From Octopus sinensis (lineage: Eukaryota), in contig NC_043012.1 in NCBI RefSeq assembly GCF_006345805.1, positions 33,728,001 through 33,792,000 on the forward strand: a DNA stretch of 64,000 nucleotides. Direction: 5' to 3'. The notes beneath the pieces are model-generated. The model was not told the DNA's origin and made no database searches. It saw nothing but the letters and a program-made list of their open reading frames with translations. A program made the translations under genes and the position numbers. This document shows positions 19,806-22,708 of this stretch, piece after piece (positions within the stretch are counted from its first letter, which is position 1; each line of letters begins with the position of its first letter).

Positions 19806-20033
19806 TATATATATATATTTATAAACAAGAAGGGTAGTAATATTATTTACTACCAGGTGCCCAGCACAAAAGACGAATTAGTCATAAGACAAAAATATTA
19901 TTCATATAGAAAAATATTATTCATGTAGTTATACAATTAAGGGGTCCTAAATTAAGATGCCGAGTGCTGGGAACACAAAAAGGGGATGAATTTATCGAGA
20001 GTGAAAATCAAAAACGTTTACCGATAACTTAAC

Positions 20034-20109
20034 AACTCGAACCGCGGTTTCTGCTTCTTTCTAGCAAAACACAGAATATGTTTGCTAAGGCTAGCTTCGT
20101 CAGCGAGTC
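20034..20109 (-). ncRNA. Type I hammerhead ribozyme fold, copy 1
   Basis: GACTCG-CTGACGA-stem II-GAAA-CCGCGG-TT-CGAGTT on minus strand. Confidence 0.7.
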
Positions 20110-20477
20110 GCCTAAATTGAATCGAGGTCTGCAGCGATGTGGGACCATGTGTTGGTCCCGACTACTAGCAGATCTTAACTTTTCAAATCTCTGCGCAGAC
20201 GCAAAACTTACACGGCAGTATAGGGCATGCCGGGAAGAATTTTACGAATAAATCCATCATGTAATATGCGAATATAAACAAGAAGGGTAGTAATATTATT
20301 TACTACCAGGTGCCCAGCACAAAAGACGAATTAGTCATAAGACAAAAATATTATTCATATTATTCATGTAGTTATACAATTAAGGGCTCCTAAATTAAGA
20401 TGCCGAGTGCTGGGAACACAAAAAGGGGATGAATTTATCGAGAGTGAAAATCAAAAACGTTTACCGATAACTTTAAC

Positions 20478-20553
20478 AACTCGAACCGCGGTTTCTGCTT
20501 CTTTCTAGCAAAACACAGAATATGTTTGCTAAGGCTAGCTTCGTCAGCGAGTC
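20478..20553 (-). ncRNA. Type I hammerhead ribozyme fold, copy 2
   Basis: Identical to copy 1. Confidence 0.7.
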
Positions 20554-20931
20554 GCCTAAATTGAATCGAGGTCTGCAGCGATGTGGGACCATGTGTTGGT
20601 CCCGACTACTAGCAGATCTTAACTTTTCAAATCTCTGCGCAGACGCAAAACTTACACGGCAGTATAGGGCATGCCGTGAAGAATTTTACGAATAAATCCA
20701 TCATGTAATATGCGAATATAAACAAGAAGGGTAGTAATATTATTTACTACCAGGTGCCCAGCACAAAAGACGAATTAGTCATAAGACAAAAATATTATTC
20801 ATATAGAAAAATATTATTCATGTAATTATACAATTAAGGGCTCCTAAATTAAGATGCCGTGTGCTGGGAACACAAAAAGGGGATGAATTTATCGAGAGTG
20901 AAAATCAAAAACGTTTACCGATAACTTTAAC

Positions 20932-21007
20932 AACTCGAACCGCGGTTTCTGCTTCTTTCTAGCAAAACACAGAATATGTTTGCTAAGGCTAGCTTCGTCA
21001 GCGAGTC
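20932..21007 (-). ncRNA. Type I hammerhead ribozyme fold, copy 3
   Basis: Identical to copy 1. Confidence 0.7.
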
Positions 21008-21385
21008 GCCTAAATTGAATCGAGGTCTGCAGCGATGTGGGACCATGTGTTGGTCCCGACTACTAGCAGATCTTAACTTTTCAAATCTCTGCGCAGACGC
21101 AAAACTTACACGGCAGTATAGGGCATGCCGGGAAGAATTTTACGAATAAATCCATCATGTAATATGCGAATATAAACAAGAAGGGTAGTAATTTTATTTA
21201 CTACCAGGTGCCCAGCACAAAAGACGAATTAGTCATAAGACAAAAATGTTATTCATATAGAAAAATATTATTCATGTAGTTATACAATTAAGGGCTCCTA
21301 AATTAAGATGCCGAGTGCTGGGAACACAAAAAGGGGATGAATTTATCGAGAGTGAAAATCAAAAACGTTTACCGATAACTTTAAC

Positions 21386-21461
21386 AACTCGAACCGCGGT
21401 TTCTGCTTCTTTCTAGCAAAACACAGAATATGTTTGCTAAGGCTAGCTTCGTCAGCGAGTC
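21386..21461 (-). ncRNA. Type I hammerhead ribozyme fold, copy 4
   Basis: Identical to copy 1. Confidence 0.7.
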
Positions 21462-22060
21462 GCCTAAATTGAATCGAGGTCTGCAGCGATGTGGGACCAT
21501 GTGTTGGTCCCGACTACTAGCAGATCTTAACTTTTCAAATCTCTGCGCAGACGCAAAACTTACACGGCAGTATAGGGCATGCCGTGAAGAATTTTACGAA
21601 TAAATCCATCATGTAATATGCGAATATAAACAAGAAGGGTAGTAATATTATTTACTACCAGGTGCCCAGCACAAAAGACGAATTAGTCATAAGACAAAAA
21701 TATTATTCATATAGAAAAATATTATTCATGTAGTTATACAATTAAGGGCTCCTAAATTAAGATGCCGAGTGCTACATGAATAATATAACTACATGAATAA
21801 TATTTTTCTATATGAATAATATTTTTGTCTTATGACTAATTCGTCTTTTGTGCTGGGCACCTGGTAGTAAATAATATTACTACCCTTCTTGTTTATATTC
21901 GCATATTACATGATGGATTTATTCGTAAAATTCTTCCCGGCATGCCCTATACTGCCGTGTAAGTTTTGCGTCTGCGCAGAGATTTGAAAAGTTAAGATCT
22001 GCTAGTAGTCGGGACCAACACATGGTCCCACATCGCTGCAGACCTCGATTCAATTTAGGC

Positions 22061-22136
22061 GACTCGCTGACGAAGCTAGCCTTAGCAAACATATTCTGTG
22101 TTTTGCTAGAAAGAAGCAGAAACCGCGGTTCGAGTT
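22061..22136 (+). ncRNA. Type I hammerhead ribozyme fold, copy 5
   Basis: Stem I 22061-66/22131-36, CTGACGA 22067-73, GAAA 22119-22, predicted cut after 22130. Confidence 0.7.
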
Positions 22137-22513
22137 GTTAAAGTTATCGGTAAACGTTTTTGATTTTCACTCTCGATAAATTCATCCCCTTTTTGTGTTC
22201 CCAGCACTCGGCATCTTAATTTAGGAGCCCTTAATTGTATAACTACATGAATAATATTTTTCTATATGAATAATATTTTTGTCTTATGACTAATTCGTCT
22301 TTTGTGCTGGGCACCTGGTAGTAAATAATATTACTACCCTTCTTGTTTATATTCGCATATTACATGATGGATTTATTCGTAAAATTCTTCCCGGCTACCC
22401 TATACTGCCGTGTAAGTTTTGCGTCTGCGCAGAGATTTGAAAAGTTAAGATCTGCTAGTAGTCGGGACCAACACATGGTCCCACATCGCTGCAGACCTCG
22501 ATTCAATTTAGGC

Positions 22514-22589
22514 GACTCGCTGACGAAGCTAGCCTTAGCAAACATATTCTGTGTTTTGCTAGAAAGAAGCAGAAACCGCGGTTCGAGTT
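22514..22589 (+). ncRNA. Type I hammerhead ribozyme fold, copy 6
   Basis: Identical to copy 5. Confidence 0.7.
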
Positions 22590-22708
22590 GTTAAAGTTAT
22601 CGGTAAACGTTTTTGATTTTCACTCTCGATAAATACATCCCCTTTTTGTGTTCCCAGCACTCGGCATCTTAATTTAGGAGCCCTTAATTGTATATATATA
22701 TATTTATA

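What the first reader, a model, noticed from the sequence alone, without database searches (positions are those of the whole stretch)
19821..22694. Hammerhead-bearing 454-nt concatemer: a candidate cephalopod retrozyme (circular RNA retroelement)
Seen: a complex, non-coding 454-bp monomer occurs about 4.3 times head-to-tail and then twice inverted, with only 1-3 differences per unit. Each of six full copies contains the same type I HHR layout: stem I GACTCG/CGAGTT, CUGACGA, long stem II (TAGCAAACA/TGTTTTGCTA inside GCT/AGC), GAAA, stem III and GUU cut site. The monomer has more hairpins (GGGACCA/TGGTCCC, GGTAGTAA/TTACTACC, CCCAGCAC/GTGCTGGG, TTATCG/CGATAA). Known: animal retrozymes are tandem monomers of a few hundred nt with type I HHRs that self-cleave and form circular RNAs, and are thought to be mobilised by PLE reverse transcriptase. 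Inference: this is such an element, or a tandem PLE pLTR, possibly an undescribed family. Caveats: extra A on each side of stem II and a weak GUU triplet.
Basis: partly seen in the sequence, partly recalled or inferred. Interest (0 to 1): 0.92.

Follow-up and report, generated by a model that had tools for sequence, protein, structure and literature searches.

The report
Octopus hammerhead-ribozyme tandem repeat (retrozyme-type)
A young 454-base tandem repeat in an octopus genome carries a hammerhead self-cleaving RNA motif in every unit and shows the insertion scars of Penelope-like retrotransposons, which makes it a likely new member of the known animal 'retrozyme' class and not a new kind of element.

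Summary
A 454-nt non-coding unit occurs 4.3 times on 19820-21773 and 2.0 times inverted on 21784-22694. Units are about 99% identical, and each of the six full copies has the same type I hammerhead (HHR) layout.

Rfam finds no hammerhead here, but it also misses two other HHR families in this window, so that negative is weak. A relaxed type I descriptor gives 0.04 hits per shuffled 64-kb window, against three independent families (9 loci) in the real one.

The motif has Penelope-like-element (PLE) HHR features: an unpaired base after A9, a G10.1-C11.1 pair, a long helix II, and a palindromic helix III (ACCGCGGU) that is stable only as a dimer.

The window is octopus DNA. It holds a degenerate PLE (reverse transcriptase plus GIY-YIG endonuclease, 86% identical to an Octopus vulgaris protein) with its own HHR. 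A 3' fragment of that PLE family lies beside the array.

The array sits in (TA)n, head-to-head with 3' ends outward. Both ends stop at a TATA, and a TATATATATT repeat flanks the whole array. These are PLE-type integration marks.

Not testable here: self-cleavage, circular RNA, and other genomic copies. Verdict: new member of a known kind, moderate interest.

The parts
19820..21773 (-). Left block: 4.3 head-to-tail units of the 454-nt monomer, with HHR sense on the minus strand. In monomer coordinates (position 1 = first base after the predicted cut) it runs from position 73 through four cut sites to position 221. Its 3' end is at 19820.
21772..21801 (.). Head-to-head junction of the two blocks. 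The left block ends at ...GCCGAGTGCT (21773). CTACATGAATAATAT then occurs twice, separated by AA, before the right block continues in register.
21784..22694 (+). Right block: 2.0 units, with HHR sense on the plus strand. It starts at about monomer position 98-108 and ends at position 111. Its 3' end is at 22694.
22058..22139 (+). HHR copy. Stem I: GGCGACUCG (22058-22066) pairs with CGAGUUGUU (22131-22139). Core: CUGACGA (22067-22073). Helix II: A-GCU...AGC-A with a distal extension of about 12 bp. GAAA at 22119-22122. Helix III: palindrome ACCGCGGU. Predicted cut after U22130.
22511..22592 (+). HHR copy, identical sequence; predicted cut after 22583.
21383..21464 (-). HHR copy; predicted cut after 21392 on the minus strand.
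20929..21010 (-). HHR copy; predicted cut after 20938 on the minus strand.
20475..20556 (-). HHR copy; predicted cut after 20484 on the minus strand.
20031..20112 (-). HHR copy; predicted cut after 20040 on the minus strand.
19810..19819 (.). TATATATATT directly left of the array: candidate target-site duplication, left copy, within a (TA)n target.
22695..22704 (.). TATATATATT directly right of the array: candidate target-site duplication, right copy. The same 10-mer repeats once more at 22705-22714, so the low-complexity caveat applies.
22716..22962 (-). Context: an older, 5'-truncated 3' end of a PLE, about 90% identical to copies at an O. vulgaris PLE locus. It carries a degenerate min-HHR (core at 22869-22827). 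Its 3' end faces the array across about 20 nt of (TA)n.

Best explanation
This is a young, non-autonomous, hammerhead-bearing retroelement array of the animal non-LTR retrozyme type in an octopus genome. A Penelope-like element's RT/endonuclease most likely placed it there.

Proposed mechanism, with shown and inferred steps marked:

1. The array is transcribed as a multimer (inferred).
2. Each unit carries a type I HHR. Its helix III is too short to fold alone, but it is an 8-nt palindrome. Two HHRs in a multimeric transcript can therefore pair into a double hammerhead and cut after GUU. The motif and the dimer energetics are shown; cleavage is inferred.
3. The 454-nt product has 5'-OH and 2',3'-cyclic phosphate ends. 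A tRNA ligase circularises it into a compact, highly paired RNA. The predicted fold is shown; the circle is inferred from published retrozymes.
4. A PLE RT/GIY-YIG protein nicks both strands of an AT-rich (TA)n target. It primes cDNA synthesis on multimeric or circular template RNA at internal UAUA-ending sites.
5. Priming from both target strands yields two multimeric cDNAs. They meet 5'-to-5' in the middle and leave a target-site duplication. The architecture is shown; the process is inferred.
For: HHR motif
- All conserved core positions are present in a type I topology in 6 of 6 units. Stem I is 9 bp.
- The relaxed descriptor gives 0.04 hits per shuffled window, against 3 unrelated HHR families in the real window.
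- PLE-HHR hallmarks are present: an unpaired nucleotide after A9, G10.1-C11.1, a long helix II, and a palindromic 15.x-16.x segment (compared with PMC4209133).
- Helix III as a hairpin has 0 kcal/mol. As an intermolecular 8-bp duplex it has -14.1 kcal/mol. The cofolded dimer of two HHR segments scores -63.3, against 2 x -26.2 for two monomers.

Whole unit
- The circular minimum free energy is -114 kcal/mol against -93 for shuffles (z = -3.7), with 64% of bases paired.
- GC content is 39%.
- No ORF exceeds 89 aa, and no protein homologue was found.

PLE context
- A degenerate RT plus GIY-YIG PLE lies at about 49281-52445 (-). It is 86% identical to an O. vulgaris protein. Its EN fragment aligns to the Pfam GIY-YIG region of a homologue.
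- That PLE has its own min-HHR 3' of the ORF.
- A PLE 3' fragment abuts the array.

Insertion architecture
- The blocks lie head-to-head with 3' ends outward, as described for PLEs (PMC8557442). A second HHR element at 46517-47352 has the same layout, also in (TA)n.
- Both outer ends coincide with two of only four TATA sites in the monomer.
- A TATATATATT repeat flanks the composite array.
- The right-block end lies 111 nt past the HHR cut. The window's own PLE ends about 116 nt past its cut. In the anole PLE, reverse transcription initiates about 85-92 nt past the cut; that PLE also cleaves and extends both strands (PMC11167929).
Against: - Rfam hammerhead models give no hit at the gathering score or at E<=10, even on a 121-nt slice. 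They also miss the canonical-core PLE HHR at 49431-49392, so this is weak evidence.
- The core is non-canonical. An extra A lies between C11.1 and G12; equivalently, there is an A.A mismatch at 10.1/11.1. The cleaved nucleotide is U17, a weak substrate.
- The 87-nt HHR segment alone does not fold better than shuffles (z = -1.05).
- The six copies are too similar to show selection on the core: 0 of about 12 variants fall in the HHR, where about 2 would be expected.
- No other copy of the unit could be found, because no searchable collection holds cephalopod genomes.
- There is no sequence similarity to the one PLE family available.
- A G/T variant alternates between successive units. That fits DNA-level duplication of a dimer as well as it fits reverse transcription.
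- In the anole PLE, the HHR is not needed for insertion in vitro (PMC11167929).
Confidence: 0.7

Rival explanations
1. The HHR is an inactive relic. The array is an ordinary local satellite that expanded by DNA-level events (unequal crossing-over or replication slippage) from a fragment once derived from a PLE or retrozyme. No ribozyme processing or circular RNA exists today.
For: - The core has a non-canonical A/A at the base of helix II and a U17.
- Rfam gives no hit.
- A G/T variant alternates at 20233, 20677, 21131 and 21585, which suggests duplication of a dimer at the DNA level.
- Only one locus was seen.
- Most copies of the neighbouring PLE family have decayed HHR cores, for example CUGAUGC in O. 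vulgaris locus L001.
Against: - The core and all three helices are intact in 6 of 6 units.
- The units differ by only about 0.5%, so the array is young.
- The array carries retrotransposition marks: 3' ends outward at TATA sites, a flanking 10-bp repeat, and a (TA)n target. Local slippage would not produce these.
- A mismatch at the base of helix II is tolerated in the axolotl HHR_Amex2 (PMC7229834).
Confidence: 0.17
2. The array is the pseudo-LTR part of an autonomous PLE insertion, that is, partial tandem copies of a full-length element. It is not a separate non-autonomous element.
For: PLEs form partial tandems with an inverted 5'-truncated copy and carry their HHRs in pLTRs (PMC8557442, PMC4209133). 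The array's layout matches that general scheme.
Against: - The repeat period is 454 nt, not 3-4 kb.
- No stop-free stretch of 90 aa or more lies inside the array, and those in its flanks between 13654 and 23800 were not scanned for RT or EN domains.
- The longest stop-free stretch in the unit is 89 aa and has no homologues.
- The unit has no similarity to the PLE in the window or at L001.
Confidence: 0.05
3. The tandem-plus-inverted layout is an assembly artefact, for example a fold-back chimeric long read or a collapsed or expanded repeat.
For: - The arms are near-perfect inverted repeats of up to 617 nt.
- The assembly has a 100-N gap at 45940-46039, so it is not gap-free.
- PLE-type tandem/inverted insertions are known to trouble assemblers (PMC8557442).
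Against: - The junction is asymmetric: a 35-nt spacer separates the arms, the blocks break at different monomer positions (73 versus about 98-108), and there is a 15-nt duplication.
- The two blocks carry different private variants.
- The outer flanks are not mirror images.
- An independent element 25 kb away and the O. vulgaris locus L001 show the same kind of layout.
Confidence: 0.05
4. The hammerhead-like layout is a chance match inside an unrelated repeat.
For: The segment's fold energy is not exceptional.
Against: - With those same relaxations, only 0.04 loci per shuffled 64-kb window match.
- The 9-bp stem I and the 8-nt palindromic helix III go beyond what the descriptor requires.
- The motif's polarity predicts the PLE-type head-to-head orientation correctly.
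- Genuine PLE HHRs occur in the same window.
Confidence: 0.02

Closest known systems
Metazoan non-LTR retrozymes (Cervera & de la Pena 2020, PMC7229834), e.g. the Mytilus galloprovincialis 350-390-nt repeats
   Same: Both are head-to-tail repeats of a few hundred bp with one type I HHR per unit. Both have low GC, no LTR/PBS/PPT and no coding capacity. The predicted RNA is highly self-paired. They co-exist with autonomous PLEs that carry atypical HHRs. The host is a mollusc in both cases.
   Different: The 454-nt unit is at the upper end of the 2020 size range, though within the 51-972 bp reported in 2026. Helix II is unusually long (48 nt) and has an A/A at its base. Helix III is of the dimer-dependent kind, whereas invertebrate retrozyme HHRs are mostly efficient as monomers. 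Here the array also has an inverted block. Expression, cleavage and copy number are unknown.
Amphibian satellite-2 / axolotl retrozymes HHR_Amex1 and HHR_Amex2 (PMC7229834)
   Same: Helix III is very short and capped by a palindromic sequence, so efficient cleavage needs two HHRs acting as a dimer. HHR_Amex2 has a mismatch (U.U) at the base of helix II and is still active. Units are 330-350 nt and arranged in tandem.
   Different: The host is a vertebrate, with tens of thousands of copies. Helix II is short with a loop 2 that contacts loop 1. There is no sequence similarity. The mismatch here is A.A.
Minimal HHRs in the pseudo-LTRs of Penelope-like elements (Cervera & de la Pena 2014, PMC4209133)
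   Same: An unpaired nucleotide lies between A9 and G10.1. G10.1-C11.1 is present, helix II is larger than usual, and positions 15.2-16.2 with loop 3 are palindromic. These HHRs associate with tandem and opposite-strand copies and show low activity as single motifs.
   Different: PLE min-HHRs have a short helix I (4-5 bp) and lie in elements that encode RT/EN. Here helix I is at least 9 bp, the unit is non-coding, and an additional A precedes G12.
PLE insertion architecture (Craig et al. 2021, PMC8557442; Frangieh et al. 2024, PMC11167929)
   Same: Both show partial tandems plus an inverted 5'-truncated copy adjoining the 5' end. Both prefer (TA)n or AT-rich targets, cleave and extend both target strands, and start reverse transcription internally about 100 nt past the HHR cut.
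   Different: Those descriptions concern autonomous 3-4-kb elements. In the anole PLE, the RT start site is not homologous to the target. Here both ends show TATA microhomology with the (TA)n target.
Plant LTR retrozymes (Cervera et al. 2016, PMC4918200)
   Same: Both are non-autonomous retroelements whose HHR-processed transcripts form circular RNAs.
   Different: The plant elements have type III HHRs within LTRs, a PBS and PPT, 4-bp TSDs, 600-1000-nt circles, and mobilisation by Ty3/Gypsy elements. None of these applies here.

Membership tests
Metazoan non-LTR retrozyme | Head-to-tail tandem repeats of a short unit (150-450 bp in PMC7229834; 51-972 bp in bioRxiv 10.64898/2026.07.22.740005) | tested here: met
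   454-nt period, 4.3 + 2.0 copies
Metazoan non-LTR retrozyme | A type I hammerhead with the conserved core (CUGANGA...GAAA...UH) and helices I-III in every unit | tested here: met
   Six of six units match a type I descriptor. Shuffled windows give 0.04 hits. Deviations: an extra A on each side of helix II, and U17.
Metazoan non-LTR retrozyme | Recognition by curated hammerhead covariance models (Rfam Hammerhead_1 and relatives) | tested here: not met
   No hammerhead hit at the gathering score or at E<=10. The models also miss the canonical-core PLE HHR and the third HHR family in this window, so they are insensitive to short-helix-III variants.
Metazoan non-LTR retrozyme | Non-coding; no LTR, PBS or PPT; GC below 50% | tested here: met
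   The longest stop-free stretch is 89 aa, with no homologues. No tRNA-like sequence. GC is 38.8%.
Metazoan non-LTR retrozyme | Unit RNA predicted to be compact and highly self-paired | tested here: met
   Circular minimum free energy is -114 kcal/mol against -93.1 +/- 5.6 for shuffles (z = -3.7); 64% of bases are paired.
Metazoan non-LTR retrozyme | Co-occurrence with autonomous PLEs that carry HHRs | tested here: met
   A degenerate RT plus GIY-YIG PLE with a min-HHR lies at about 49281-52445 (-). A PLE 3' fragment lies at 22716-22962.
Metazoan non-LTR retrozyme | Sequence relatedness of the unit to a PLE pseudo-LTR (bioRxiv 2026) | tested here: inconclusive
   No similarity to the only PLE family available, in the window and at L001. 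Other octopus PLE families could not be examined. An 8-mer, TTCTTGTT, just before the terminal TATA is shared with the HHR element at 46517-47352.
Metazoan non-LTR retrozyme | Site-specific self-cleavage of transcripts | not testable with these tools
   Needs in vitro transcription of monomer and dimer.
Metazoan non-LTR retrozyme | Unit-length linear and circular RNAs in tissues | not testable with these tools
   No cephalopod RNA-seq is searchable. Protein-level searches of assemblies found nothing.
Metazoan non-LTR retrozyme | Multiple dispersed genomic loci (a mobile family) | not testable with these tools
   One locus in this window. The DNA collections hold no cephalopod genomes.
PLE-type minimal hammerhead (PMC4209133) | Unpaired nucleotide between A9 and G10.1, followed by a G10.1-C11.1 pair | tested here: met
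   CUGACGA-A-GCU...AGC. The window's PLE HHR shows the same feature: CUGAUGA-G-GUCACA...UGUGAC.
PLE-type minimal hammerhead (PMC4209133) | Palindromic 15.2-16.2 / loop 3, implying action as a dimer | tested here: met
   ACCGCGGU is a perfect 8-nt palindrome. The hairpin has 0 kcal/mol; the duplex has -14.1 kcal/mol.
PLE-type minimal hammerhead (PMC4209133) | [quoted passage not shown] | tested here: not met
   Helix I is 9 bp. After an A.A mismatch it continues into the rod of the whole unit.
Autonomous Penelope-like element | A single ORF with RT and GIY-YIG endonuclease between pseudo-LTRs | tested here: not met
   No such ORF in the array. Flanking stop-free stretches of 90 aa or more exist but were not scanned for RT or EN domains. 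The RT and EN remnants found lie 27 kb away.

The most novel reading that the evidence does not exclude
The locus is the intact footprint of a single twin-primed PLE integration that used circular or multimeric retrozyme RNA as template. Both strands of a (TA)n site were nicked about 10 bp apart. Each 3'-OH annealed to a UAUA-ending module of the RNA, 111 nt and 221 nt past the HHR cut. Two multi-unit cDNAs (4.3 and 2.0 units) were made and joined 5'-to-5'. If this is right, it would be sequence-level evidence for how animal retrozymes are mobilised. It would also define a cephalopod HHR variant with a symmetric A/A insertion at the base of helix II.
Probability: 0.3. Interest if true: 0.6.

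Novelty: new member of a known kind. Interest (0 to 1): 0.4.

Why it matters
Animal retrozymes are a recently recognised source of abundant small circular RNAs. How they move is still argued from indirect evidence. This locus matters for three reasons:

- It would extend the class to cephalopods. I found no paper describing an octopus or cephalopod retrozyme.
- It places a young array, an older PLE fragment and a PLE with its own ribozyme within one 64-kb stretch.
- It shows unusually clean insertion marks: a (TA)n target, 3' ends outward at TATA sites, and a flanking 10-bp repeat. These make PLE-mediated mobilisation directly testable.

The gain is incremental. The class, its link to PLEs and its presence in molluscs are already published.

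Tried and rejected
- **Rfam.** I scanned at the gathering score on the whole window, and at E<=10 on 3.5 kb and on 121 nt. There was no hammerhead hit. I do not treat this as decisive, because the same models miss the other two HHR families in the window.
- **Other copies, through translated stop-free stretches.** The 70-aa sense stretch had no candidates. The exact 57-aa antisense ORF is not on record. The 72-aa antisense stretch, searched against 1.84 billion representatives, gave one weak hit (E = 6e-4, 36% identity), which I take to be spurious.
- **Other copies, through exact DNA patterns.** There were no hits in viral contigs or metagenomes, and none in prokaryotic genomes for the first pattern. 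The second pattern matched two bacterial MAGs. Both matches lie in ordinary coding sequence with no CUGANGA upstream, and two of the three loci are the same sequence at contig ends. About 0.3 such matches are expected by chance, so I rejected them.
- **Similarity of the unit to the PLE, to L001 or to the rest of the window.** Only insignificant short matches were found.
- **Internal duplication** that might explain the two similar 3'-end modules. The alignment is no better than shuffles (28% of shuffles score at least as well).
- **tRNA-derived (SINE-like) origin.** No tRNA was found.
- **Pfam on the window's EN fragment alone.** There was no hit. EN identity rests instead on an alignment to a homologue's Pfam GIY-YIG region.
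- **Selection on the HHR** judged from variation between units. There are too few variants for a test.
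Full report
**1. The observation**

Tandem Repeats Finder reports a 454-nt period with 4.3 copies at 19820-21773, and a 453-nt period with 2.0 copies at 21784-22694. BLAST of one unit against the whole window finds only this array, in two orientations. Inverted arms reach 617 nt at 99% complementarity.

I phased the units at the predicted cleavage site, so that monomer position 1 is the base after GUU. 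Full units then differ from the consensus by 0-3 substitutions or small indels, and one unit has a 10-nt deletion. In these coordinates:
- The left block, read on the minus strand, runs from position 73 through four cut sites to position 221.
- The right block starts at about position 98-108 and ends at position 111.

The junction is asymmetric. A 35-nt spacer separates the arms, and a 15-nt duplication sits at 21772-21801.

**2. Is the hammerhead real?**

Rfam gives no hammerhead hit at the gathering score on the window, at E<=10 on 3.5 kb, or at E<=10 on a 121-nt slice. I therefore wrote a type I descriptor. It requires:
- helix I of at least 5 bp;
- CUGANGA, optionally followed by one unpaired base on each side of helix II;
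- helix II of at least 3 bp, with a span of up to 80 nt;
- GAAA;
- an A15.1-U16.1 pair closing any small helix III;
- H17.

On 200 dinucleotide-preserving shuffles of the window, the descriptor finds 0.04 loci per window. On the real window it finds nine loci in three unrelated sequence families:
- the six copies in the array;
- a minimal HHR at 49431-49392 (-): GGCCA CUGAUGA GUUCACAGGAGUGUGAC GAAA UAAC UU|UGGCC;
- an inverted pair at 47239-47329 (+) and 46630-46541 (-): UUUUAG CUGAUGA [64-nt helix II] GAAA C GAU GUA|CUAAAA.

Rfam misses the other two families as well. Its silence therefore reflects insensitivity to HHRs with a 1-3-bp helix III. It does not show that the motif is absent.

**3. 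Anatomy of the array's HHR**

The sequence at 22058-22139 reads: GGCGACUCG / CUGACGA / A-GCU-[internal loop, about 12-bp distal helix, triloop]-AGC-A / GAAA / CCGCGG / U-U | CGAGUUGUU.

[quoted passage not shown] A large helix II and palindromic 15.2-16.2/loop 3 positions belong to the same signature (PMC4209133). The PLE HHR in this window shows the same extra base.

The A before G12 is unusual. Read as an A.A mismatch at 10.1/11.1, it has a precedent in the U.U mismatch of the active axolotl HHR_Amex2 (PMC7229834).

U17 is also used by the window's PLE HHR copy (a) and by the L001 copies, whose cores are otherwise mutated.

Helix III (ACCGCGGU) has no stable hairpin (0 kcal/mol). As an intermolecular duplex it gives -14.1 kcal/mol. 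Two HHR segments cofold to -63.3, against 2 x -26.2 for separate monomers. This is the double-hammerhead logic known from newt and axolotl repeats and proposed for PLE HHRs (PMC7229834, PMC4209133).

The HHR segment alone is not unusually stable (z = -1.05). That is common for hammerheads, whose core is not made of Watson-Crick pairs.

**4. The unit as a whole**

- GC content is 38.8%.
- The longest stop-free stretch is 89 aa. Neither strand's translation has homologues.
- No tRNA-like sequence is present.
- The circular fold is -114 kcal/mol, against -93.1 +/- 5.6 for shuffles (z = -3.7), with 64% of bases paired. HHR helix I forms the closing stem of the rest of the molecule.

These are the published traits of animal non-LTR retrozymes (PMC7229834).

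**5. Surroundings and host**

On the minus strand, 50239-51819 is one reading frame with two in-frame stops and a weak RVT_1 match. Its best homologue is an 803-aa Octopus vulgaris protein at 86% identity, so the window is octopus DNA.

A frameshifted C-terminal piece (49965-50288) aligns at E = 2e-12 to residues 518-597 of a homologue. That homologue's residues 547-609 are a Pfam GIY-YIG domain. This is therefore a canonical EN+ Penelope-like element, degenerate in this copy.

Its min-HHR lies 3' of the ORF. The element ends in (TA)n about 116 nt after the HHR cut.

The O. vulgaris locus of the homologue (L001) shows the usual PLE tandem/inverted layout. Its HHR cores are mutated to CUGAUGC.

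The 247 nt right of the array (22716-22962) are about 90% identical to the 3' end of this PLE family. They are on the minus strand, 5'-truncated, and carry a degenerate HHR. The fragment's 3' end faces the array across about 20 nt of (TA)n.

**6. Insertion architecture**

Taking HHR polarity as sense, the two blocks lie head-to-head with their 3' ends outward. This matches the 'inverted 5'-truncated copy adjacent to the 5' end' described for PLEs, and the preference for (TA)n targets (PMC8557442).

The third HHR family (46517-47352) has the same design. Its 240-nt inverted arms are 95% identical, the HHRs lie near the outer ends, and (TA)n sits on both sides.

Both outer ends of the array coincide with two of only four TATA sites in the monomer, at positions 108-111 and 218-221. 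The array is bracketed by TATATATATT at 19810-19819 and 22695-22704. This is a candidate 10-bp target-site duplication, with the low-complexity caveat.

The block ends do not coincide with the HHR cut site. The template was therefore not a linear HHR-processed monomer. It was a multimer or a circle, primed internally.

The right-block end lies 111 nt past the cut, close to the roughly 116 nt in the window's PLE. In the anole PLE, reverse transcription starts about 85-92 nt past the cut and both target strands are cleaved and extended (PMC11167929). I infer twin priming on both strands of the palindromic (TA)n target. This step is inference.

**7. Limits**

- I could not find a second locus of the unit. 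None of the searchable collections holds cephalopod genomes or transcriptomes.
- The six copies are too alike to test selection on the core.
- The unit is not similar to the one PLE family I could inspect, so the autonomous partner is unknown. An 8-mer, TTCTTGTT, just before the terminal TATA is shared with the element at 46517-47352. This may hint at a common partner.
- A G/T variant alternates between successive units in the left block. That is compatible with DNA-level duplication of a dimer or with a dimeric template.
- Cleavage, circularisation and transcription are untested.

**8. Comparison and verdict**

The element works like an animal non-LTR retrozyme and meets every defining feature that could be tested. 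Its HHR is structurally closest to PLE-type, dimer-dependent hammerheads.

It is not an autonomous PLE or a PLE pLTR in the strict sense. The period is 454 nt and the unit holds no ORF.

I found no paper reporting retrozymes or HHR repeats in octopus or other cephalopods. The class is, however, stated to be widespread in invertebrates including molluscs (PMC7229834), and its derivation from PLEs is already argued (bioRxiv 10.64898/2026.07.22.740005).

I rate it a new member of a known kind, with an interest score of about 0.4. The most valuable aspect is the clean integration footprint next to PLE sequences.

Noticed in passing
window 49281-52445 (-): Degenerate Penelope-like element. The RT frame at 50239-51819 has two in-frame stops. 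A frameshifted GIY-YIG fragment lies at 49965-50288. A 3' UTR of about 550 nt follows, then a min-HHR (core 49431-49404, cut after 49397), and the element ends in (TA)n. It is 86% identical to an O. vulgaris 803-aa protein.
   Followed up: yes
window 46517-47352: A second non-coding HHR element. Its 240-nt inverted arms are 95% identical, and each carries a type I HHR with a 64-nt helix II and a GUA cut site (after 47323 on +, after 46546 on -). The central part has a 157-nt direct duplication, and (TA)n flanks both sides. The left arm runs about 125 nt further 3' than the right arm, which may be a PLE-style 'tail'.
   Followed up: partly
window 22716-22962, and L001 4658-4876 / 6445-6663: The PLE 3' fragment beside the array has a short inverted copy of its own last ~60-85 nt at its 5' side (GGAATGGTTATTTTGCCAGTTTAGC ... 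GCTAAACTGGCAAAATGACTATTCC). The same inverted arrangement occurs at the O. vulgaris locus, so it seems to be a feature of this PLE family and not of this one copy.
   Followed up: partly
L001 (O. vulgaris OX597831.1, 50363320-50379602): All three copies at this locus that retain the PLE HHR read CUGAUGC instead of CUGAUGA (A9 to C). Those copies probably carry an inactive ribozyme, while the window's copy at 49431 has the canonical core.
   Followed up: partly
window 20233, 20677, 21131, 21585: One substitution alternates G, T, G, T in successive units of the left block. This higher-order (dimer) periodicity suggests either duplication of a dimer or a dimeric template.
   Followed up: partly
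window 19806-19819, 22695-22714, and throughout (e.g. 19539-19618, 22964-23079, 44680-44800, 46220-46397, 47380-47530): The window is very rich in (TA)n and (TG)n microsatellites. Every PLE-related 3' end seen here abuts a (TA)n run.
   Followed up: partly
window 45940-46039: A run of 100 N (assembly gap), about 480 nt left of the second HHR element.
   Followed up: no
window 28557-31659 (-): Long stop-free stretches (385 and 265 aa) with a weak zf-RVT match. This is probably a decayed LINE-type retrotransposon, unrelated to the array.
   Followed up: no
window 10108-11379 (-) and 53082-54353 (-): Two 424-aa stop-free stretches (ORFs of 422 aa) of identical length, strongly low-complexity, with no Pfam match. 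They probably arise from simple repeats and not from genes.
   Followed up: no
L002 29-49, L004 93-113, L003 4937-4957: The 21-mer GCAGAAACCGCGGTTCGAGTT from the HHR matches bacterial MAG contigs (Micrococcales, Myxococcales) exactly. The matches lie in ordinary sequence without a hammerhead core and are chance matches.
   Followed up: yes
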